This document shows positions 54,946-64,000 of a DNA stretch of 64,000 nt, piece after piece. The first letter of the stretch is position 1, and every line of letters starts with the position of its first letter. Below the pieces are notes generated by a model. That model worked only from the letters and a program-made list of their open reading frames with translations. It was not told where the DNA came from and did not search any database. A program made the position numbers and the translations under genes. Location of the stretch: IMG/VR virus record IMGVR_UViG_3300033145_003233, positions 62,001 through 126,000 of that record; one strand, given 5' to 3'.

Positions 54946-55563
54946 TTACTTATATTTTAGTAAAATATAATTTTGAGTTTCTGTAGGAGAATGTGCTATC
55001 CAATCTTCCCCATATTTTTCCCATGCATTTTTTACATTTCCTATTCCCCAATCATAAGATCCTAACCTTGTTTCAATATTATCAGGTATATTATAATATT
55101 TTAACATTTGAGGGATTCTTTGATTAAGATAATAATCGGCCACTTGGCTACTTTTATTATAATCCATAGATCCATTCCACCAATCCCAGTTTTTCCCCAT
55201 TCTACTCATCATCTCATTCCAAGTTTTTTCTAAAAATTGAAAATGCCCCCTAGCTCCTGCTTTGCTTCTGTCCATATTGGGATCTTGCCCGCTCGATGAT
55301 TCTATCCCCCATATTTTATTAATATCAATATTTATAGGGGCATTTTCTACTTGTTGGACCTGTGGTTCTTGTGGCGCTTGTTTTTCCTGTTGAGCTTGTT
55401 GAACTTGTTGGGTTAATTCTTGAGGATTTTCTTTAATCCGATTTTCAATATCAAAAACAGATACGCCCAATAATAAAGCTATAGCAGGAACAGCCAAAAA
55501 TCCGAAAGCTGTCCATAATCCCTTAGCTTCTTTATTCATTTGTGCTTTTTTGTACCAATTCAT
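54946..55563 (-). CDS. MNWYK-family lytic transglycosylase (SLT/lysozyme-like) with one TM helix
   Basis: MNWYKKAQ; IESS (catalytic Glu), GARGHFQF..KTW, SYDWGIGNV, ETQNY. Confidence 0.8.
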   Translation of the reverse strand: MNWYKKAQMNKEAKGLWTAFGFLAVPAIALLLGVSVFDIENRIKENPQELTQQVQQAQQEKQAPQEPQVQQVENAPINIDINKIWGIESSSGQDPNMDRSKAGARGHFQFLEKTWNEMMSRMGKNWDWWNGSMDYNKSSQVADYYLNQRIPQMLKYYNIPDNIETRLGSYDWGIGNVKNAWEKYGEDWIAHSPTETQNYILLKYK

Positions 55564-57707
55564 TAGGCAGAGATCCTTTTTCTATACCAATTATAACCCA
55601 ACTTCATTAAGACATAAGGTTGTATATCACCAGGAACTTTGTTCATCAATGCCTCAAAATTTGATGGTTGTCTATTTAGCATATTAGCATAATATTGTGC
55701 TGTTTCATCTATCAACTCAGCCGGTAAGTATGTTCTAACATTTTCTGGAACACTCATCCAAAATTGATGAAGCATACCTGGATATCTGCCCTTATTTCTA
55801 GCAAAAGCTTGACCTATATCTGCTCCATAAGTTTTCAAAAGAGCATCTTGAATATCGGGGGTCAAACTTTTCCAATAACCAGGGTCTCTCATAACATGAT
55901 TCTTTTTCTCTTCTAACAGATACCCTACTTGACCTACATCTTGCCCGCCTAAAATATCATTTTTATACTGAGGAGGCACATAGTCCATCCATTCAGGATG
56001 CCTTCTTAAAGCACCTTTAAAAGCTTCTACTATTTGCTCTCTAGTTATTAGCCCCATAGTTACTAATTTTTCCGCTCTTTGTAGTTTATCATATTTTCCG
56101 CGAGCTTGAGAAACAGGGAATTTGGCAAAATCTGCAAGAACATGTTTTTCAATTTCTCCGGCATCAAATAATTGCAAAATTTGAGGAAACATATAATCAA
56201 TATGCTCTGGATTTCTTTGTAATAATTCTGCCCACTCTGTTTTTAGATTATTTAATGGAAAATTCTGTTTAATATCACTAGGTATTCTCTTATCGTTATA
56301 ATGATAAGGATCTTGACCTATATAGTTATGCCATGCTGAAACCTGTTCCTGTTCAGAAAACATTTTCTGGATGTCAGGAGAAAATTCTGGAAAAAGAATA
56401 GGATTATGGTAAAAGGCACTTTTATGAGCTTGTAAAATACGAGGTTTCATATCCCCTAAAGCATTTCTTACTTCCTCTGGAATACGCCTATAATAATCTT
56501 GAAACGATTCAAATTTTCTTAAATATTCATCAGGCTGTACCCCTACTCCCTCTATTTCCAGAAGCCTATCATTTATTTTTATAGAATATCCTTCTTTAGC
56601 AGCCGTTAAAAATTCTGGGAAATTTGCTCTGTTTTTTTCACTTACTGAACGATATTGATTAGGGTCGTCTTTAATTATCCCCATAATATAATTAATTTTT
56701 TCTGTATCACCCTTTTCAATATCAGCATTCATCAACATTGTTTTTTCAAGGGTTTTATATTGAGCACATTCTTTATAGTCTAGGCCGCTTTGTGATAAAA
56801 AGTTAACAACTGGCTCCCAGTAAGGAGTTAGATTTTCATCTTTATTATGATGACCTCTAATTTCAGATACTCTATTCCCGACTAATCTTACCGCCACTGT
56901 AGCCTTACCATCTACTAGATATAACCAAAAATCTCCTTGTGATAGATATGGTCTAGCCTGACCGCATGCTGTACACCATCCAGTTCCTGTGCTAAATCTT
57001 TTTAACTTGTCTGCATTAGCCTCAAAATTTTTAGAATCTGCTGATTTAGATGGAATTCTTATCCACTCTCCACCTTCTTTAGTTCCTATCTTTTCTACAG
57101 ATTTTTTATCTACATCGGAAGCAAGCTTACCATACCTTTTAAGGATATTCATTTGGGTAGAACCTTGAGTAGTTAATTCATCCCATACTAATCCTAGAGC
57201 TTCAGCATTGATAGGTGGAGGAGCAGCCTTTTTTGTTTCGGGAGAACTATCGAAGATGGGTTTAAGAATAGAAAAAGCAAATGCTGGATTTTCTTTGTAT
57301 ATATCATTTTCTTTAGTTAGATATTCCCACCAATCAGAAAATACTTTCTTCTTATCATCATTAACTACTTTTAGAATTTTTTCTTTCGCTCCTTGAGGAT
57401 CTGCCTGATAAATTCTCATAGCTATTTGTACTTCAGGATTATTTGGATCTTGAGCAAACTCTCTTTCCAAATTTATATCTTTTACATAATTGTTGTTATC
57501 TGAAGAAGGGTCTATCTTAGATTGTAGGGAAGGAAGAAATTCAGTTGATATAATGTTTTCTAAATCTTCTTTGGTTTTTATTTTATTCCAGTCAACAAGC
57601 TTTTCATATTTATAGACAAACAACTTGAGAGCAGGATTAGCTATTCCTAACTTATTAATCTTATCTTTAGCACCAGCAAGTTTTGTTAGTTTTTTATGCC
57701 AATTCAT
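55563..57707 (-). CDS. Large MNW(H)K-family protein with GTGWCTA domain
   Basis: MNWHKK start; STGTGWCTA...GDFWLY...EIRG; C-terminal YNWYRKR. Confidence 0.7.
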   Translation of the reverse strand: MNWHKKLTKLAGAKDKINKLGIANPALKLFVYKYEKLVDWNKIKTKEDLENIISTEFLPSLQSKIDPSSDNNNYVKDINLEREFAQDPNNPEVQIAMRIYQADPQGAKEKILKVVNDDKKKVFSDWWEYLTKENDIYKENPAFAFSILKPIFDSSPETKKAAPPPINAEALGLVWDELTTQGSTQMNILKRYGKLASDVDKKSVEKIGTKEGGEWIRIPSKSADSKNFEANADKLKRFSTGTGWCTACGQARPYLSQGDFWLYLVDGKATVAVRLVGNRVSEIRGHHNKDENLTPYWEPVVNFLSQSGLDYKECAQYKTLEKTMLMNADIEKGDTEKINYIMGIIKDDPNQYRSVSEKNRANFPEFLTAAKEGYSIKINDRLLEIEGVGVQPDEYLRKFESFQDYYRRIPEEVRNALGDMKPRILQAHKSAFYHNPILFPEFSPDIQKMFSEQEQVSAWHNYIGQDPYHYNDKRIPSDIKQNFPLNNLKTEWAELLQRNPEHIDYMFPQILQLFDAGEIEKHVLADFAKFPVSQARGKYDKLQRAEKLVTMGLITREQIVEAFKGALRRHPEWMDYVPPQYKNDILGGQDVGQVGYLLEEKKNHVMRDPGYWKSLTPDIQDALLKTYGADIGQAFARNKGRYPGMLHQFWMSVPENVRTYLPAELIDETAQYYANMLNRQPSNFEALMNKVPGDIQPYVLMKLGYNWYRKRISA

Positions 57708-57708
57708 T

Positions 57709-60138
57709 TTATAATTTTGGTTTATATTCGTTATAAGTTCTTTTCAATACTCTTACCACTGCTCCCCTACCATGAGATGCATTCATTGCTTTTAAACTTT
57801 TTATATATTGAGCAGTAGCATTTGCATCTTGAAATTTAGGAGAAATCTGTGCCATAAGCTCAAAAAATTTCTCTATCACTTCATCAACATTTCTATTTTC
57901 TTTTATAATTCTTTGTTCTGCTAGTTCTCCGAGGTCATATTTGCCAAACCAAGAAGGTAAACCAGCAGGCTTTTCAGGGATAGCTTCAGGGATAGCTTCA
58001 GGAAGAGCTTCAGGAGGAGCTTCAGGTGCGGCCGCAGGATCAACTATTTCTAATTTCTTTATTTGGGTATTTCTATAACGAGCATTAGTAGGTCCTTTGA
58101 TTCCCTTCACATATATTTCTTCTCCCTGTTGTGCTCCACCCCATGGCTCACGATTAGTAAATAGAATATACTTGCTTGCATCTCGACCCCTAAACTCATT
58201 TAGATAATTAGTATATCCTCCACGCTGGAATGGTCTAGAGCTTACAAACTTAAGATGAGCAGTAAAGGTAGAACCTTCATCTACTTCTGTTATATTGTCT
58301 ACTCCAGCAGGTCCTTCTGGTTCAGGCGTAGGAACAGGAGCAGCTATTTGCTCAGGAGCAGCTACTGGTTCAGGCGTAGGAACAGGAGCAGCTATTTGTT
58401 CAGGAGCAGCTACTGGTTCAGACTCTTGAATCGGTGCAGGCTCTAAAGTAATTTGATTGGCCTCTAAATACATCCTAACCATTGCGAGAAGATTCCTTAA
58501 ATTTTTATCTTTTAATCCTATAGTACTAACAATACTTAAATTAACTTTATTTCTACCATCATCATAATCTTCTAAATCTAAACCCCCAACTTTATCCATC
58601 CACCATCTTCTTGCTTCCTTACCTATTCTAAAATCTTCTTCAGAAATATCGGGGGCCTTTCCATAATACCTCCCTCTCTGTTGCGCATTTGGATCATAAC
58701 CTGGCTTGGCCATTTCGTCCTGTTTCCGTTCATAGGAACGAGCACCTCTCCATAGGCTATTTAATAATCTATAATCTCGATCTTGTGCGGCAGGAGTTCT
58801 TAACAAATGAATAGCAGTAGCAAATAACACATCAGAACCGATACTACCATATCCCCATCCTCCTCCTTTATGTTTCTTCTTAGCTTTTGCTTTTTCATAT
58901 TCTTCTCTATATTTTCTTGCACTATTAACCCATCTTTTAAGATTATTAATTGTTTTTACAGCATCAAATGGATCAATACATTTACCCCCGAATTGTTGTT
59001 GTTGAGCGTTTTCTATATCTTCATCTCTAATAACCTTAACAGGTTGTTGTTCTGTTTGTCCACTTTGTCTATTTGTAACATTTCTCATCATAACTTGCTC
59101 TTGCCCATCTGGTCCTCTCATCGTCTTATTCTTCATTTGAGATTGAGGGACTACAACGCCAACGTAAGTGGCCTTTCTTGCTGTAGCTCCTGCTTTTTTA
59201 ACCTGACAAGCATGACAATATTGAGGAGAACTATACCAGAACTGACCATCTAATGGTGGAGCGCCCTCTAATGCTTCAACTTGATTAAAATATGGGGTTT
59301 CCCTTTTAGTCCTGCTCTGTTCAATAACTCCTCTTAATGGAGAATCAGCAGGTAGGGTTTGAAGATAATGCTGTTGTCTTTCTTCGTCTATAGGTATATG
59401 AGTTATTTTAGCAACTAATCTCACTCCAACAGGTTCATAACCATCAAAATTCCATTTCGTTGAACCGTCCCTTGCTGTTGTTGCCTTATATTTTTTAATT
59501 CTAATTACTTCGGAAGGACTTGGAAGAGTTCCAGATACCTTAACTCTTACAAAATCTTCTTTATATGTTCCATTTTGCCATTTAACTGGTTTAGGATATG
59601 GATCAGAAATTTGAACACTAATCTCAGGATAAAACATGTCCTTTAATCTTTTATTAGTCGTGTTTAGTCTTTTAATTAAAGTATTAACTCTGGCAGATGG
59701 AATCTCGAATGTCTCTAATAATGTTGGGTCAGAAGTTACTTTTTCTTCTAAACTAGGAGGAGTGTCTAACTGTTGAGTTAATGGAGCGCCTCCCACTTCT
59801 TCGTCTGCTGCCCCTTGCTCTCCTTCCTTCCCATCAGGCTCAATTACCTCTTCAGGAGGAGCCTGTGCTCTCTGTACATCAACCGGAGTAGGAACAGGCT
59901 CTTCTCCTACATCCATTCCTTGTAAATGAGTCATTAATCCATTGGGATCTCCTACAAGACCCCATAATTGAGGGTCCCTAAAAGCAGGATCTTCTATTGA
60001 CATTTCTCCTATAAATTGATTAATAATTTGAACAACATCTCCACCTTCTTGCAATGATTGCAACGCTTTATTTCTTATATCTGCTTTAGATGCTTCTTTG
60101 CCAAAAATACTCTTTGTTCTTTGTCTATACCAATTCAT
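57709..60138 (-). CDS. Large MNWYR-family protein with Pro/Ala-rich repeats
   Basis: MNWYRQR start; CHAC motif; PEPVAAPEQIAAPVPT repeats. Confidence 0.75.
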   Translation of the reverse strand: MNWYRQRTKSIFGKEASKADIRNKALQSLQEGGDVVQIINQFIGEMSIEDPAFRDPQLWGLVGDPNGLMTHLQGMDVGEEPVPTPVDVQRAQAPPEEVIEPDGKEGEQGAADEEVGGAPLTQQLDTPPSLEEKVTSDPTLLETFEIPSARVNTLIKRLNTTNKRLKDMFYPEISVQISDPYPKPVKWQNGTYKEDFVRVKVSGTLPSPSEVIRIKKYKATTARDGSTKWNFDGYEPVGVRLVAKITHIPIDEERQQHYLQTLPADSPLRGVIEQSRTKRETPYFNQVEALEGAPPLDGQFWYSSPQYCHACQVKKAGATARKATYVGVVVPQSQMKNKTMRGPDGQEQVMMRNVTNRQSGQTEQQPVKVIRDEDIENAQQQQFGGKCIDPFDAVKTINNLKRWVNSARKYREEYEKAKAKKKHKGGGWGYGSIGSDVLFATAIHLLRTPAAQDRDYRLLNSLWRGARSYERKQDEMAKPGYDPNAQQRGRYYGKAPDISEEDFRIGKEARRWWMDKVGGLDLEDYDDGRNKVNLSIVSTIGLKDKNLRNLLAMVRMYLEANQITLEPAPIQESEPVAAPEQIAAPVPTPEPVAAPEQIAAPVPTPEPEGPAGVDNITEVDEGSTFTAHLKFVSSRPFQRGGYTNYLNEFRGRDASKYILFTNREPWGGAQQGEEIYVKGIKGPTNARYRNTQIKKLEIVDPAAAPEAPPEALPEAIPEAIPEKPAGLPSWFGKYDLGELAEQRIIKENRNVDEVIEKFFELMAQISPKFQDANATAQYIKSLKAMNASHGRGAVVRVLKRTYNEYKPKL
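57973..58026. repeat. 12-bp tandem repeat within CDS (PEAx)
   Basis: TTCAGG(GAT/AAG/AGG)AGC x4.5. Confidence 0.8.
58319..58421. repeat. 48-bp tandem duplication within CDS
   Basis: GGTTCAGGCGTAGGAACAGGAGCAGCTATTTG(C/T)TCAGGAGCAGCTACT x2 plus a partial copy. Confidence 0.85.
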
Positions 60139-60265: not shown

Positions 60266-61255
60266 ATGATAGGGAAATTATTACAACCTCTGAATTCTCT
60301 ACAATTGCCATCAAACCTTTTCATTGCTAGCGATAATCCTATCACTGAATATGATAGAATATGGATTAGAGATAATCTATATAGCGCCCTAGCTTATGAG
60401 GCAACTGGACAACAAAAAATAGTAGAAAAAATATACCACGCCCTACTAGACCTCTTCCTTAAATTTGAATGGAAAATTGATGAAGTAATACGAGAAAAAC
60501 CAACAGAAGACTATAAATTTCTACATCCTATGTACACAAAAGACCTAGAAGAAATAACAGCAGGATGGGGATGGAAACAAAATGATACAATTGGTGGATT
60601 TTTATACCATATAGGAAAATTGTGGGATAAAAAATATAATGTTATTAGAAATGGTATAGATCTAAAAATAATTAATAAACTTGCACGTTATCTAGAATCT
60701 ATACAATACTGGGAAGATGAAGATAATGGGATGTGGGAAGAGAACAAAGAAATTCATGCCTCTTCAGTAGGAGCATGTGTAGCAGGATTGAAGTCAGTAA
60801 GTAACCTCATCCATATTCCTCATGAGGTAATTGCAAATGGAGAAAAAACACTAACACAACTCCTTCCAAGAGAATCTCAGGAAAAACCAGTTGATCTATC
60901 TCTTCTAAGTCTTATATGTCCATATCAAATTACAACTCTTAAACAAACATATCAAATTCTTCAAAATATAGAAACTTATCTAATTAGAAAAAAAGGATCA
61001 ATTAGATATATAGGAGATAAATATTATATGGAAAATGATATAGAGGCAAGCTGGACTATGGGGCTACCATGGTTAGCGATATGTTATTATCTTTTGAAAG
61101 ACTTTGACAAATACAATCATTATATAGCAATGTCTATTGAGTGTCTTAATAGAAGAATGGAAATGCCAGAATTATATAAGGAAGATAAAATTCCCAATGA
61201 GAATACTCCATTAGGATGGCCCCAATCATTACTAATTGTAGCTCTTAGTTTATAG
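60266..61255 (+). CDS. Glycoside hydrolase family 15-like (glucoamylase / phosphorylase-kinase-like) protein
   Basis: WIRDN, GMWEE...HASSVGAC.AGL, PLGWPQS. Confidence 0.75.
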   Translation: MIGKLLQPLNSLQLPSNLFIASDNPITEYDRIWIRDNLYSALAYEATGQQKIVEKIYHALLDLFLKFEWKIDEVIREKPTEDYKFLHPMYTKDLEEITAGWGWKQNDTIGGFLYHIGKLWDKKYNVIRNGIDLKIINKLARYLESIQYWEDEDNGMWEENKEIHASSVGACVAGLKSVSNLIHIPHEVIANGEKTLTQLLPRESQEKPVDLSLLSLICPYQITTLKQTYQILQNIETYLIRKKGSIRYIGDKYYMENDIEASWTMGLPWLAICYYLLKDFDKYNHYIAMSIECLNRRMEMPELYKEDKIPNENTPLGWPQSLLIVALSL

Positions 61256-61654
61256 CTATTTAGACCAATGTTTGGGAGTTTTTGTGTGTTTTCTGCGATA
61301 GAGATTAGTTTCATATTTAGGAGGAGAATGACCATTACAAATTGGAGACTCTTTTCTATACGTCCTTCTCTGGGGAGTTCTATTCCTAAATTTTCTCCAA
61401 TCTCTTCTATATTGTAAATTATACATAGCCCTTCTACTATCCCAACTATGAGCACAATTATAAGTATTATAAGGGTGTTGCCTAATCACACGAGGGGAAT
61501 AACCGCTACGATTTTTTCTATTTTGAATTAGTTTTCTTTGAGCAACCGTCCGTCTATCTTTTAATAGTCTTCTTCGTCTGGTTCTTTTGGACTCTCCAGA
61601 AGCCACAGATGGAAGAAGTAGTAAAATCATGATAAATAAAAATGTCTTTTTCAT
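61256..61654 (-). CDS. Secreted Arg-rich hypothetical protein
   Basis: MKKTFLFIMILLLLPSVASG signal peptide; ATG at 61654 (the longer tracked ORF reads through the upstream RNA-like region). Confidence 0.55.
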   Translation of the reverse strand: MKKTFLFIMILLLLPSVASGESKRTRRRRLLKDRRTVAQRKLIQNRKNRSGYSPRVIRQHPYNTYNCAHSWDSRRAMYNLQYRRDWRKFRNRTPQRRTYRKESPICNGHSPPKYETNLYRRKHTKTPKHWSK

Positions 61655-61664
61655 TATTGTCCTT

Positions 61665-62051
61665 TCAAAAAATAGAAAGCAGGCAGGAATCTTCTCTGTA
61701 ATATGCCTTGCGGCTATTATCCTGCTGCAACAGATTGCCCGAGTACACGCTTTCAGCCGTCCGTCGGTACACGCCTTCCACGCCGCTGCTTCCCTAAAAC
61801 ATCCTAAAAGTAGGCAGTTGGTTTGCCTCCTATCTCCACAAGGGAAATAGGGATAAAATTTAACACTGCAACCTTTTTCAGCGGTAAAGACGCAAGTATC
61901 CAAAAGCCACTAAGGAACGGCAATCTCCACAAGTCAGGCTACCACACCACTACTTTCAAGAAATATCAATTTTTTAATGAACTATCTAAAAAGAAAGCAT
62001 CAAACTGAAGTGCTCCAGCCTGATGCTTTCCGGAGGGGAGAAAACTCTTTC
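61665..62051 (-). ncRNA. Candidate large structured ncRNA (~390 nt)
   Basis: GC-enriched island without a credible ORF, behind a sigma70 promoter; several hairpins, GNRA-type loops and internal direct repeats. Confidence 0.5.
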
Positions 62052-62057
62052 ACTAAT

Positions 62058-62086
62058 AATATACAAAGAATCCCCCGAAAAGTCAA
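62058..62086 (-). promoter_or_regulatory. Sigma70 promoter
   Basis: TTGACT-N17-TATATT on the minus strand. Confidence 0.7.
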
Positions 62087-62144
62087 GAGAAAAATAAAAA
62101 ATATTTAAAATTTTAAGTGCCTATAGAATAAAGAGTTATAAAAA

Positions 62145-62627
62145 TCACAATATTAATATTTCCCATCTATTATGAATCATACTATTTTCAACACATTTTG
62201 AGCAAGCATATGCCTTAGGAAAGTTATAGTGATTTTCAATCATTTCCTCGATTAAAAAATACTTTTTACAACTATTACAGAGATCATGATCGGGAGAAAA
62301 TTTTTCTGGGTTTAAACCAACACAGGTTTCACAATAATAACCATCATAATCAATCATTTCTTCAATTAAAAATCTCTCTATACAGCTATTACAATACTGG
62401 TAATCTGAAGATGATTTTTCTGGCATTAAATGGACACAATCCGAACAATAATAATAACCGTCACAATGATCATAATATAAATATTCTTTATATATTATTG
62501 TTCCTCAATTTGAGCAGTCTCCATAATCCTCTATCATAAAAGAGCATCTAAGACAACCATCATCTTTACAATGCCTAATATGTAGTATGTCATCTTCTTC
62601 TGAAAGATATCTATCAGGTACTTCCAT
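62145..62627 (-). CDS. Multi-CxxC Zn-finger repeat protein with in-frame TGA at 62505-62507
   Basis: MEVPDRY...CSN*GT...CSDC...CNSC...CETC...CNSC...CSKC...NRWEILIL; all one frame. Confidence 0.55.
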
Positions 62628-62952
62628 AAGCTTTCATCCTATATATAGCATCATACGTTAATTGATCCTTTATATATTGTCCACAATCCTCCCACTTTGC
62701 AACAGAAAAATTGTCAAAATTCTTAATATGATAAAAAGGGTCTACATCGCATTTCATCTCTCCACAAGCTATTTTTATACAAAAAGCATATCCCATGCTA
62801 TTATCAAGCAACTCAAAATATATATAAAGAAGAGTTTTATCTTCAACCTGATATACCTCCCACTCTTGCCCTTCGATAAAGAAGCTTGTAAGATATTGAT
62901 CTGAAGAAATAAGTTTCAATTCTTCTAAATGCTTTTTAACTAAATTTTCCAT
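62614..62952 (-). CDS. Hypothetical protein
   Basis: 112 aa ORF. Confidence 0.55.
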   Translation of the reverse strand: MENLVKKHLEELKLISSDQYLTSFFIEGQEWEVYQVEDKTLLYIYFELLDNSMGYAFCIKIACGEMKCDVDPFYHIKNFDNFSVAKWEDCGQYIKDQLTYDAIYRMKAYGST

Positions 62953-63730
62953 TTATAAAAGGATTGTCCCTCCATATAACATGATTTTTATCAACTCTAT
63001 CTTTGAAATTTTTAGCCATCTTTTTGTAATCTCCTGGTAATATTTTTTTGGGAAGAATATATGTAATGGGATCACTCACAAAATGGGACCAGACATATTT
63101 GAAATTATCTTTATCTATTTGTTGCAAAAAAGATTCTTTCCATATCTTAGAAAAATATTTATTACAACTAATTCTATCATAATGACCATGATATTTGTTC
63201 ACAAATCCTATTTTATCAACATGTAAGGTATACATGTAAAAAGCATAAAAAAAAGTTAGCATGTGACAAGTTTCTGTCCACCACCATGAAACACGGTCAA
63301 AATTAGTATATACCGGGAAGCACACTTTAAAAGCATCAGAATGAAAAGCTAATAAAATAGTGGTTTGATGTTCTATTTTATTAATAAAGTTATAGTAAAC
63401 AGTTCCAATAGCAGGTTGGTACTCTAATAAAAAATCATCAAATATTTGCCATGGATTCTTTCCCTCATCTTCAGGATATTTATCTTTTCTAATACGTAAT
63501 TCAAGGTCATTCTCCAAACAAACATAATATAAATATTTCTTAGGAACTATCTCTGCTAATTTATTTTTACCTTCCCAGCATGTGCTATTAGGAAAAAATA
63601 TACTATTTTTATACTCTACTGGCTTCTTCCACGATAAAATATATACGTCCCTTCCCATCTCTTCTAATGTTTTAACATATTTAGGGATATAGTCTGAAGT
63701 CTGAACTAGATATGCTATTTCTTTAGCCAT
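62936..63730 (-). CDS. Hypothetical protein, possibly glycosyltransferase-like
   Basis: 264 aa ORF; YVCLEND resembles a DxD-type segment (weak). Confidence 0.55.
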   Translation of the reverse strand: MAKEIAYLVQTSDYIPKYVKTLEEMGRDVYILSWKKPVEYKNSIFFPNSTCWEGKNKLAEIVPKKYLYYVCLENDLELRIRKDKYPEDEGKNPWQIFDDFLLEYQPAIGTVYYNFINKIEHQTTILLAFHSDAFKVCFPVYTNFDRVSWWWTETCHMLTFFYAFYMYTLHVDKIGFVNKYHGHYDRISCNKYFSKIWKESFLQQIDKDNFKYVWSHFVSDPITYILPKKILPGDYKKMAKNFKDRVDKNHVIWRDNPFINGKFS

Positions 63731-64000
63731 TTATAAAAGGGTTATTCTTCCAAATATTATGATCTTTTTTTACTCTTTTTTTGAAATCCTCTGCTAATTC
63801 CAAATATTCTCCAGGATAAGGTTTTTTATATTTAATACCAGTAGAGGATCTACCATTCCTACATTTAAATCCTTCATCTATTTTTTTCTTATCTTCTTCA
63901 TATAATAAAGAAGTTTTATAGAACTTATCCCAGAAATATCTTCTACGATATTTAACTCTTCCACCTCTATGAAGCCCATTCTCCCAACAGATATCAAAAA
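63723..64000 (-). CDS. Partial CDS, paralog of 62936..63730 (5' end outside the window)
   Basis: Ends PGEYLELAEDFK...HNIWKNNPFING, versus PGDYKKMAKNFK...HVIWRDNPFING. Confidence 0.6.
   Translation of the reverse strand, partial: FDICWENGLHRGGRVKYRRRYFWDKFYKTSLLYEEDKKKIDEGFKCRNGRSSTGIKYKKPYPGEYLELAEDFKKRVKKDHNIWKNNPFING

What the first reader, a model, noticed from the sequence alone, without database searches (positions are those of the whole stretch)
61665..62086. Promoter-driven, GC-enriched, highly structured ~390-nt non-coding island
Seen: a minus-strand TTGACT-N17-TATATT promoter followed by sequence clearly more GC-rich than its surroundings with no credible ORF. Hairpins include GAAAGCATCA/TGATGCTTTC (61993-62030), AGGCA/TGCCT (61812-61828), a GCC-GCAA-GGC tetraloop and a GCAGCAGG/CCTGCCTGC 3' stem before a T-rich tract. 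Direct repeats are ATCTCCACAAG (twice) and GTACACGC (twice). Established: large phages carry big structured RNAs such as GOLLD and ROOL. Inference: a large ncRNA or ribozyme that I cannot assign to a known family.
Basis: partly seen in the sequence, partly recalled or inferred. Interest (0 to 1): 0.65.

Follow-up and report, generated by a model that had tools for sequence, protein, structure and literature searches.

The report
Small host-like phage RNA plus orphan spacer
The flagged stretch is not one big 390-base RNA: its promoter drives a roughly 63-base regulatory RNA that this 548-kb phage shares with Planctomycetota bacteria, and the GC-rich 300 bases behind it are a dispensable insert with no sign of folded structure.

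Summary
The reading as one large structured RNA does not hold.

The region has two parts.

(1) Window 62086-61988 (minus strand) holds a TTGACT-17-TATATT promoter. It is followed by an unpaired C/U-rich stretch, UUUUCUCCCCUCCG, then an 18-bp hairpin and a U-tract. Together these make a small RNA of about 63 nt.
- Twenty distinct copies exist. Two other giant-phage lineages carry it at the syntenic position.
- Across 185,579 species genomes, all 14 exact hits are Planctomycetota MAGs.
- The upper stem covaries: 7 pairs change on both sides and 97.5% of cells are paired.
- Copies with a different terminator keep the same C-rich stretch.
- No Rfam family matches. I read it as a trans-acting RNA that pairs with G-rich ribosome-binding sites, carried by the phage as a copy of a host RNA.

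(2) Window 61987-61662 is the GC-rich "island".
- It folds no better than shuffled sequence (z from -1.0 to +0.4).
- It is single-copy and has no homologue anywhere searched.
- A close relative lacks it at the same site.
- A 13-nt direct repeat flanks it.
- The 215-aa ORF is an artefactual extension of a real 132-aa secreted protein.

The parts
62058..62086 (-). Sigma-70-type promoter, TTGACT-17-TATATT, of the small RNA
   Evidence: 10 of 12 matches. The same layout (TTGACA/TTGACT, 16-nt spacer, TATACT, then 17 nt to the conserved stretch) occurs in the phage relatives L031 and L041.
61988..62051 (-). Small RNA of about 63 nt. The start is inferred at about 7 nt after the -10 box; the end is the U-tract.
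   Evidence: Folds at -26.6 kcal/mol with z=-4.1, and the C-rich stretch stays unpaired. Scores 64.7 bits with model R1. 98% identical in a relative whose flanking genes are 84-92% identical.
62031..62044 (-). Conserved single-stranded C/U-rich stretch UUUUCUCCCCUCCG (the likely pairing seed, resembling the anti-Shine-Dalgarno sequence)
   Evidence: Invariant in all 20 aligned copies, but these were found by exact match, so that is partly ascertainment. Also kept in copies found by the model that have a different terminator.
61988..62031 (-). Intrinsic terminator: 18-bp hairpin (62031-61992) plus U-tract (to 61988)
   Evidence: The upper 7 pairs covary: 45 cells changed on both sides, 97.5% paired, 0 of 500 shuffles reach this. 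RNAalifold predicts the same helix independently.
61662..61987 (-). GC-rich 'island': an orphan non-coding insert that is present or absent among relatives
61953..61965 (.). Left copy of the 13-nt direct repeat flanking the insert (12 of 13 identical to 61662-61674; spacing 291 nt)
   Evidence: family D1. The relative's empty site carries one similar copy. The repeat is A/T-rich, so chance is not excluded.
61662..61674 (.). Right copy of the 13-nt flanking direct repeat; overlaps the T-run and the ribosome-binding site of the next gene
   Evidence: family D1.
61829..61851 (-). 9-bp hairpin inside the island (CCUAUUUCC / GGAGAUAGG). It weakly resembles the reverse strand of a type I-C CRISPR repeat.
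   Evidence: About 64% identity by my own hand alignment. No Rfam CRISPR-DR match. Judged probably chance.
61667..61794 (-). 3' domain of the island: closing stem 61794-61786 with 61682-61674, then T6 at 61672-61667
   Evidence: MFE structure, z=-0.9. A 151-nt contig of a relative covers 61667-61787 at 93% identity but continues differently downstream.
61256..61654 (-). Real gene: a 132-aa basic protein with a signal peptide (ribosome-binding site GAAAGGA at 61666-61660). The 215-aa ORF is its artefactual upstream extension.
   Evidence: Orthologue P0137 is 77% identical and starts at the same Met. Coding score is 0.26 for the gene and -0.02 for the extension.
62145..62426 (-). Upstream gene: a 93-aa Cys-rich protein with no relatives found

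Best explanation
The finding joins two unrelated things.

(A) A small-RNA gene. A sigma-70-type promoter at 62086-62058 starts transcription near 62051. The RNA has an unpaired 5' stretch, UUUUCUCCCCUCCG, and ends at a strong intrinsic terminator (18-bp hairpin plus U-tract, 62031-61988), giving about 63 nt. The same RNA is a chromosomal gene in Planctomycetota, with one or two copies per genome. It is also carried at a syntenic position by at least two other giant-phage lineages. By inference, the C-rich stretch pairs with G-rich ribosome-binding sites of the GGAGGGGAG type and blocks translation initiation. The phage copy would then let the phage act on the host RNA's targets or on its own genes. 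This also points to Planctomycetota as the host.

(B) Directly behind the terminator lies a GC-rich insert of about 290-320 nt (61987-61662). It sits in a slot that varies between relatives. It is non-coding, single-copy, no more structured than chance and dispensable. I take it as passenger DNA: an insertion, or the undeleted state of a deletion between 13-nt repeats. At most it is transcribed by read-through as a 5' leader of the 132-aa gene.

Shown: the anatomy, the covariation, the distribution, and the absence of the insert in a relative. Inferred: the transcript ends, the pairing mechanism, the host, and the lack of function of the island.
For: Small RNA:
- A metagenome scan with the 20-mer found phage-like AT-rich contigs (L031/L033, L041/L070/L081) with the same promoter, C-rich stretch, hairpin and U-tract layout.
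- In these contigs it lies upstream of homologues of the window's 809-aa and 714-aa proteins (38% identity over 728 aa), so the position is syntenic.
- The scan of 185,579 species genomes gave 14 hits, all Planctomycetota MAGs.
- Five of five such genomes have one strong copy (62.7-73.1 bits), and three have a weaker second copy.
- Copies with unrelated terminators keep AUCUUUCUCCCCUCCG.
- Covariation: 7 of 14 pairs change on both sides, 97.5% of cells are paired against 84% in shuffles, and only 44-59% are paired when the partners are slid. RNAalifold gives the same helix.
- The single-sequence fold gives z=-4.1.
- The module is 98% identical in a relative whose genes are 84-92% identical.
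- No Rfam match in the window or in host loci.
- GGAGGGGA-type ribosome-binding sites exist before several phage genes.

Island:
- z is -1.0 to +0.4 on both strands.
- It is single-copy in the genome.
- No hits in GenBank phages, in five exact-pattern scans of IMG/VR, or in 401 Planctomycetota genomes. The 41 hits at E<=0.1 there are about what chance predicts (roughly 40).
- In the X1/X2 relative, the terminator is followed after about 30 nt by a ribosome-binding site and ATG like those of the 132-aa gene.
- A 13-nt direct repeat flanks it.
- The coding score of the in-phase frame is -0.02. That is below the 1st percentile of real genes, 0.13.
- The orthologue starts at the same Met.
Against: - No RNA data exist. 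No RNA run holds the region, so the start, the end and terminator efficiency are predictions.
- The 20 aligned copies were ascertained by exact match to the C-rich stretch and lower stem. Their invariance there is therefore partly circular; only the upper stem and the copies found by the model are free evidence.
- Only 5 of 151 sampled Planctomycetota genomes matched under strict filters. The RNA is therefore patchy in the phylum, or the first-look filter missed copies.
- No conserved perfect target was seen in five host genomes.
- The phage GC of 34% is far below most Planctomycetota.
- For the island: its 3' domain is 93% identical in a relative, at the upper end of the 84-92% range for the neighbouring genes.
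- The frame in phase with the downstream ATG is open for 85 codons (P=0.003 by shuffling).
- A contig of a more distant relative has 532 uncalled nt upstream of the orthologue.
- Many real RNAs show no MFE signal.
Confidence: 0.62

Rival explanations
1. One reading: one non-coding RNA or ribozyme of about 390 nt runs from the promoter through the first hairpin to the T-run at 61667. The first hairpin would be an internal domain rather than a terminator.
For: There is one clear promoter and no second one inside the island. Both hairpin-plus-T-run elements lie on the minus strand. GC is enriched. The 3' domain is 93% conserved in a relative.
Against: - The first hairpin with its U-tract is the terminator of a self-contained RNA. 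That RNA is found in 20 or more other contexts without any island.
- The island has no MFE excess and no homologues.
- The island is absent at the orthologous site of a relative that keeps the small RNA at 98% identity.
- No Rfam large-RNA family matches.
Confidence: 0.07
2. The small-RNA terminator acts as an attenuator, and the island is a cis-regulatory 5' leader of the 132-aa secreted-protein gene. It would be read only when termination is overcome. Its 3' stem plus T-run would be a second checkpoint next to the ribosome-binding site.
For: In the relative without the island, the terminator is followed after about 30 nt by the gene's ribosome-binding site and ATG. The gene there must depend on read-through or on an unseen promoter. 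No separate promoter is visible before the gene. The island's 3' stem ends 6 nt before the ribosome-binding site.
Against: The gene works without the island in a relative. There is no structure signal and no riboswitch or leader family match. In L031 and L041 the same small RNA is followed by quite different genes or by the opposite strand. It is therefore not tied to this gene.
Confidence: 0.15
3. The island is the decayed remnant of a foreign, GC-richer protein-coding gene or an N-terminal extension. This would explain the 85-codon open frame in phase with the 132-aa gene.
For: The in-phase open frame has P=0.003, and the longest open frame across all six frames has P=0.09. The flanking repeats are 291 nt apart, a multiple of three. 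NCBI's pipeline called the 215-aa ORF on an identical contig. GC is unlike the rest of the phage.
Against: - The coding score is -0.02, and GC3 is 0.42 against 0.23 in the real gene.
- The only start is a TTG with no good ribosome-binding site.
- There is no Pfam hit.
- An exhaustive search of 1.84 billion proteins found nothing for residues 1-83. The only hits there were a translated CRISPR array and a repeat protein.
- The signal peptide would become internal.
- The orthologue starts at the later Met.
Confidence: 0.12
4. The island is a small mobile or modular element carrying a functional RNA. One example would be a solitary CRISPR-repeat mimic (RNA anti-CRISPR) read from the plus strand around 61829-61856.
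For: - The island is present or absent between relatives, with a flanking 13-nt direct repeat. Its 3' domain sits on a relative's contig that continues differently downstream.
- The hairpin 61851-61829 and its flank resemble the reverse strand of a type I-C-like repeat. The same 9-10 nt lie on one side, the stem is of like length with changed pairs, and the loop is similar.
Against: - Identity to that repeat is only about 64% (my hand alignment).
- The protein-level E-value (1.6e-5) is inflated because four identical repeat copies are summed.
- There is no Rfam CRISPR-DR match at E<=10.
- The second ATCTCCACAAG copy has no 3' arm.
- The phage has no CRISPR array.
- That array's 83 spacers do not hit the phage.
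- The island is single-copy and has no terminal inverted repeats.
- No plus-strand promoter or terminator is seen there.
Confidence: 0.04

Closest known systems
Trans-acting bacterial small RNAs with C-rich, anti-Shine-Dalgarno-like seeds. Recalled from my own knowledge: RsaE/RoxS of Firmicutes and the alpha-proteobacterial NfeR1 (alpha-r14) family with CCUCCUCCC motifs. NfeR1 papers appeared (PMC10746234; bioRxiv 10.1101/2025.11.14.688489) but were not read.
   Same: A short RNA with its own promoter, an unpaired C/U-rich stretch complementary to G-rich ribosome-binding sites, and a Rho-independent terminator. The seed is far more conserved than the rest.
   Different: No sequence or model match to any Rfam family. 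The seed sits directly against the terminator rather than in hairpin loops. Distribution is Planctomycetota plus giant phages. Pairing with targets is untested.
Phage-encoded regulatory small RNAs that act on host or phage mRNAs (for example prophage DicF in E. coli; recalled from my own knowledge)
   Same: A phage-borne, promoter-plus-terminator RNA of about 60 nt, conserved across related phages at one genomic position.
   Different: Here the phage RNA shares its whole seed and terminator base with a chromosomal host RNA family. That suggests capture or mimicry. No target is known.
Large structured phage RNAs GOLLD and ROOL
   Same: GC-enriched non-coding stretch in a very large phage genome.
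   Different: No covariance-model match. The island is about 300 nt rather than 500-800. It has no conserved homologues and no excess folding energy.
RNA anti-CRISPRs / solitary CRISPR repeat units in phages (recalled from my own knowledge)
   Same: A single repeat-like hairpin in a phage intergenic region.
   Different: Similarity is only weak, to one I-C-like repeat. There is no matching host system, no transcript signals on that strand, and no Rfam CRISPR-DR match.

Membership tests
Any Rfam 15 family, including GOLLD, ROOL, HEARO, tmRNA, riboswitches, CRISPR-DR and known small RNAs | Covariance-model score at or above the family's gathering threshold | tested here: not met
   Only two tRNAs elsewhere in the window reach gathering score. 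At E<=10 over 61400-62300 there are only seven chance-level hits of 14-23 bits, each 18 or more bits below threshold. Host and phage-relative loci give none.
Intrinsic (Rho-independent) terminator | G+C-containing hairpin immediately followed by a U-tract on the transcribed strand | tested here: met
   62031-61992: 18 pairs, loop of 4, then UUUUU. The helix is kept by covariation in 20 sequences.
Trans-acting small RNA (generic) | Own promoter and own terminator, independent of neighbouring genes | tested here: met
   Promoter consensus at a fixed distance in three phage lineages. A conserved promoter-like sequence lies upstream in several host loci. Neighbouring genes differ between loci.
Trans-acting small RNA (generic) | Seed conserved beyond the rest of the molecule | tested here: met
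   AUCUUUCUCCCCUCCG is kept in copies whose terminators are unrelated. Caveat: most copies were ascertained by this sequence.
Trans-acting small RNA (generic) | A discrete transcript of the predicted size | not testable with these tools
   No RNA run holds the region.
Trans-acting small RNA (generic) | Complementary target sites at translation starts | tested here: inconclusive
   Several phage genes have GGAGGGGA(G) just before the ATG. In five host genomes, nearly all exact 13-mers are the RNA genes themselves.
Large structured non-coding RNA (the island) | Homologues with compensatory base changes | tested here: not met
   No homologue was retrievable. The one relative fragment (93% identity) could not be read base by base.
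Large structured non-coding RNA (the island) | Folding energy below that of shuffled sequence | tested here: not met
   z is -1.03 for the full island and -0.9 to +0.4 for its parts.
Protein-coding gene (215-aa ORF) | Codon usage like the genome's genes, and a conserved start | tested here: not met
   The extension scores -0.02, against a 1st percentile of 0.13 for real genes. Orthologue P0137 begins at the internal Met. No Pfam hit.
Miniature mobile element (MITE-like) | Terminal inverted repeats, target-site duplication and several copies | tested here: not met
   A 13-nt flanking direct repeat is present, and an empty site exists in a relative. However, there are no terminal inverted repeats and only a single copy in 548 kb.
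RNA anti-CRISPR / solitary repeat unit | Close identity to the repeat of a CRISPR system of the host | tested here: inconclusive
   About 64% identity to one I-C-like repeat from an unrelated metagenome contig (my hand alignment). No CRISPR-DR model hit. The host's arrays are unknown.

The most novel reading that the evidence does not exclude
A 548-kb phage and its relatives carry a working copy of a conserved Planctomycetota small RNA and use it to reprogramme host translation. In addition, the GC-rich insert behind it is a mobile RNA module that moves between sites in these phages, possibly a CRISPR-repeat mimic. For the phage-borne host-like small RNA alone I would put the probability of function near 0.5. 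The probability below is for the island also being a functional mobile RNA.
Probability: 0.07. Interest if true: 0.7.

Novelty: new member of a known kind. Interest (0 to 1): 0.42.

Why it matters
This removes a false lead: there is no GOLLD/ROOL-like RNA here. What remains is smaller but useful.
- A small-RNA family absent from Rfam has an invariant 14-16-nt C-rich seed. It is shared between Planctomycetota chromosomes and at least three giant-phage lineages.
- Small-RNA regulation in Planctomycetota is, to my knowledge, almost unstudied.
- A phage copy of a host regulatory RNA gives a concrete, testable case of a phage borrowing host post-transcriptional control.
- It is also sequence-based evidence for assigning these uncultured sediment megaphages to a host phylum.

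Tried and rejected
- Rfam at gathering score and at E<=10 gave nothing. ARAGORN found no tmRNA or tRNA in the region.
- Looked for relatives through neighbouring proteins. The GH15 gene has 1610 relatives, the closest at 63% identity. Five contig sets were fetched, and none holds anything like the island. The one syntenic contig (P0003, Logan SRR26090899) and the 132-aa orthologue's contig (SRR29092999) have no DNA on hand.
- The 93-aa neighbour has no relatives. The 264-aa neighbour has only paralogues in this genome.
- Contigs identical to the window (L011, L012) carry no variation.
- IMG/VR protein-pattern scans gave nothing. Four exact-pattern scans with island sequence gave no hits or chance hits: one in a GC-rich phage, one in a helicase motif.
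- BLAST of the island against 401 Planctomycetota genomes gave 41 hits at E<=0.1, about what chance predicts (roughly 40). They cluster on the most GC-rich segment.
- Most of the 66 metagenome hits to the 20-mer are the ABC-ATPase signature motif read on the other strand, and were discarded.
- A second model hit in the genome (163254-163310, 29.6 bits) is just a C-rich stretch plus the terminator after a 73-aa gene. The GC-rich gap behind it encodes a 76-aa lipoprotein, so there is no repeated 'small RNA plus island' design.
- CRISPR idea: no array in the phage, and the spacers of the look-alike array do not match the phage.
- Hits to the island's translation are a translated CRISPR array and a repeat protein.
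Contigs labelled 'human gut metagenome' were microbial ABC-transporter genes and were not pursued.

Full report
Setting. The window is bases 62001-126000 of a 547,943-bp IMG/VR virus record. The genome has GC 33.6%, reads well under the standard code and carries 29 tRNAs. The finding lies in a 490-nt gap (61655-62144), and every relevant feature is on the minus strand. Upstream is a 93-aa Cys-rich ORF (62145-62426). Downstream is an ORF whose credible start is the ATG at 61654 (132 aa, signal peptide, very basic). A GH15 glycoside hydrolase gene converges on it from the plus strand.

The observation. The promoter-like site, the named hairpins, the two short direct repeats, the GC bump and the 215-aa ORF are all present. 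No Rfam 15 family matches at gathering score. At E<=10 there are only chance-level hits, and ARAGORN finds nothing. The claim of high structure does not survive dissection. The 406-nt stretch has z=-2.2, but the first 64 nt alone have z=-4.1. The remaining 326 nt have z=-1.0, and their sub-domains range from -0.9 to +0.4 on either strand.

Part A, a small RNA. The hairpin at 62031-61992 has 18 pairs and is followed by UUUUU. It begins only about 20 nt after the predicted transcription start. Laying two sediment metagenomes on the region showed a relative whose genes are 84-92% identical. Its stretch 62092-61988 is 98% identical, with one G-to-A change that turns a G-U pair into A-U, plus a one-base deletion.

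I scanned the metagenome collection with the 20 bases 62044-62025. Most of the 66 hits were the ABC-ATPase signature motif on the other strand. Nine loci (six distinct sequences) repeated the whole layout instead. That layout is a TTGAC(A/T)-16/17-TATA(C/T)T promoter, about 17 nt, UUUUCUCCCCUCC, then a hairpin whose base is GGAAAGC/GCUUUCU with a freely varying upper stem, then a U-tract.

Two of these lineages are AT-rich phage contigs (L031/L033 and L041/L070/L081). In them the module sits upstream of homologues of the window's 809-aa and 714-aa proteins, so the position is conserved. What lies between the module and the 809-aa homologue differs. L031 has nothing there. L041 has a 248-aa gene on the other strand. 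The window has the island, the 132-aa gene and GH15.

A gapped exact pattern scanned over one genome for each of 185,579 species gave 14 hits. Every one is a Planctomycetota MAG (Phycisphaerae, Planctomycetaceae, Isosphaeraceae, Pirellulales). One further hit is a 45-kb IMG/VR contig of GC 0.56. Several host loci share a promoter-like sequence about 30 nt upstream and a gcvH gene nearby in either orientation. The RNA is therefore a free-standing gene and not a leader.

On the 20 distinct sequences, the seven upper-stem pairs all show changes on both sides (45 cells). 97.5% of cells are paired, against 84% in column shuffles (0 of 500 reach the observed value) and 44-59% with slid partners. RNAalifold predicts the same helix. 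The lower stem and the C-rich stretch were fixed by my search pattern, so their invariance in this set is not evidence.

The covariance model R1 then found copies in other Planctomycetota genomes with quite different terminators. These still read AUCUUUCUCCCCUCCG. That is independent support that the single-stranded stretch is the constrained part. Five of five genomes tested have one strong copy, and three have a weaker second one. Only 5 of 151 sampled genomes of the phylum matched under the stricter large-scale filters. The family is therefore patchy, or copies were missed.

The RNA behaves like a trans-acting small RNA whose seed resembles the 16S anti-Shine-Dalgarno sequence. GGAGGGGA(G) occurs just before the start codons of several genes of this phage. 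No conserved perfect target was seen in host genomes. The mechanism is inference.

Part B, the island (61987-61662). It is single-copy in the genome. It has no match in GenBank phages, in IMG/VR by exact patterns (the two hits were chance), in any fetched relative, or in 401 Planctomycetota genomes beyond chance.

In the X1/X2 relative, one contig runs from the end of the 93-aa gene through the small RNA. Directly after the U-tract at 61988 it continues with about 30 nt ending in GAAAGGAACAATAATGAAA. That is the ribosome-binding site and start of the 132-aa gene with one extra base. So the island is absent at the orthologous site.

Another 151-nt contig of the same runs covers 61667-61787 at 93% identity. 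Its 30 bases beyond 61667 do not match the window. Either two strains differ here, or the segment sits elsewhere in that genome. These are low-depth Logan contigs, and the two runs may not be independent. I could not see the eight differences base by base.

A 13-nt direct repeat (12 of 13 identical; 61953-61965 and 61662-61674, 291 nt apart) flanks the segment. This fits either an insertion with target duplication or a deletion between short repeats in the relative. The repeat is A/T-rich, so chance is not excluded. No promoter of the type seen before the small RNA lies inside the island.

Coding? The frame in phase with the ATG at 61654 is open for 85 codons (P=0.003 by dinucleotide shuffling; P=0.09 for any of the six frames). 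Its codon-usage score is -0.02. Real genes here score 0.26-0.46, and the 1st percentile of 85-codon pieces of long ORFs is 0.13. GC3 is 0.42 against 0.23 in the real gene. The only start is a TTG.

Pfam finds nothing. An exhaustive search of 1.84 billion proteins with the 215-aa ORF found one true relative. P0137 (133 aa) matches residues 84-214 at 77% identity and begins at the same Met-Lys-Lys. The 215-aa ORF is therefore an artefact, although a decayed foreign coding fragment cannot be excluded.

A CRISPR lead. The second hit of that search is a translated CRISPR array next to cas2, with a 33-nt repeat of type I-C style. The island's 9-bp hairpin (61851-61829) and one flank resemble the reverse strand of that repeat, at about 64% identity by my own alignment. 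Against this:
- the E-value sums four identical repeats;
- no Rfam CRISPR-DR model matches;
- the phage has no array;
- the array's 83 spacers do not hit the phage.

I treat it as chance but list it as a low-probability rival.

Verdict. It belongs to an undescribed family shared by Planctomycetota and giant phages. The GC-rich remainder is an orphan, dispensable insert with no evidence of RNA structure. This is a new member of a known kind (a seed-plus-terminator small RNA). The phage-host sharing and the host clue are of moderate interest. The large-RNA claim is not supported.

Noticed in passing
Outside the window: genome G000:C1 about 259561-259909, minus strand (L015:1562-1910): The phage encodes a full-length tmRNA (Rfam RF00023, 105.6 bits, E=1e-40). 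ARAGORN run over the whole genome did not report it.
   Followed up: partly
window 62936-64000 and upstream in the genome (L010:1-5795): The 264-aa ORF belongs to a tandem array of at least eight paralogues (254-293 aa, 43-56% identical). It has almost no relatives outside this genome and no Pfam family.
   Followed up: partly
window 60266-61255 (+): The phage GH15 glycoside hydrolase has 1610 relatives. Many of the named ones are from Woesearchaeota or Nanoarchaeota MAGs at about 50-55% identity. The closest (57-63%) are unnamed, on short contigs and on large ones of up to 461 kb.
   Followed up: partly
L002:10093-10672 (461-kb JGI contig, minus strand): A 580-nt gene-free gap holds three tandem copies of a unit of about 90 nt. 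Each has conserved ends (GAAAGGCUAUUU...CUUCCUUCUAAC ... AAGCUUUCC) around a variable hairpin. It is unrelated in sequence to the island and looks like a repeated structured RNA.
   Followed up: no
L018:1235-1675: Downstream of a 62%-identical GH15 gene there are three copies of a motif of about 22 nt (CAUUGCUUAAGGCAAUGACUCU-like hairpins) in a 440-nt gene-free gap.
   Followed up: no
L005:7196-7384, L006:71-259, and the P0003 contig: Relatives carry a 61-62-aa CsrA-family gene (PF02599) a few hundred bases from their GH15 gene. A phage-borne RNA-binding translational regulator sits near the slot where this phage has its small RNA.
   Followed up: no
Outside the window: genome G000:C1 163254-163310, minus strand (L013:6755-6811): Second, weak hit of the small-RNA model (29.6 bits): a U/C-rich run plus the terminator after a 73-aa gene. 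A 76-aa lipoprotein gene with a lipobox follows it.
   Followed up: yes
window 55563-60138 (-) compared with L031, L041 and L070: The 809-aa and 714-aa proteins have no Pfam family. They are conserved in that order behind the small RNA in distant giant-phage contigs (714-aa protein: 38% identity over 728 aa).
   Followed up: partly
L100:5327-5392 (IMG/VR contig of 44.8 kb, GC 0.56): A second, GC-rich viral contig also carries the small RNA in its host-like form. It may be a Planctomycetota phage or prophage.
   Followed up: no
Genomes G002, G004 and G005 (Planctomycetota MAGs): Each has a second locus with the identical 13-nt seed complement and a weaker model score (28-30 bits). The host RNA therefore seems to exist as two paralogues with different terminators.
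   Followed up: partly
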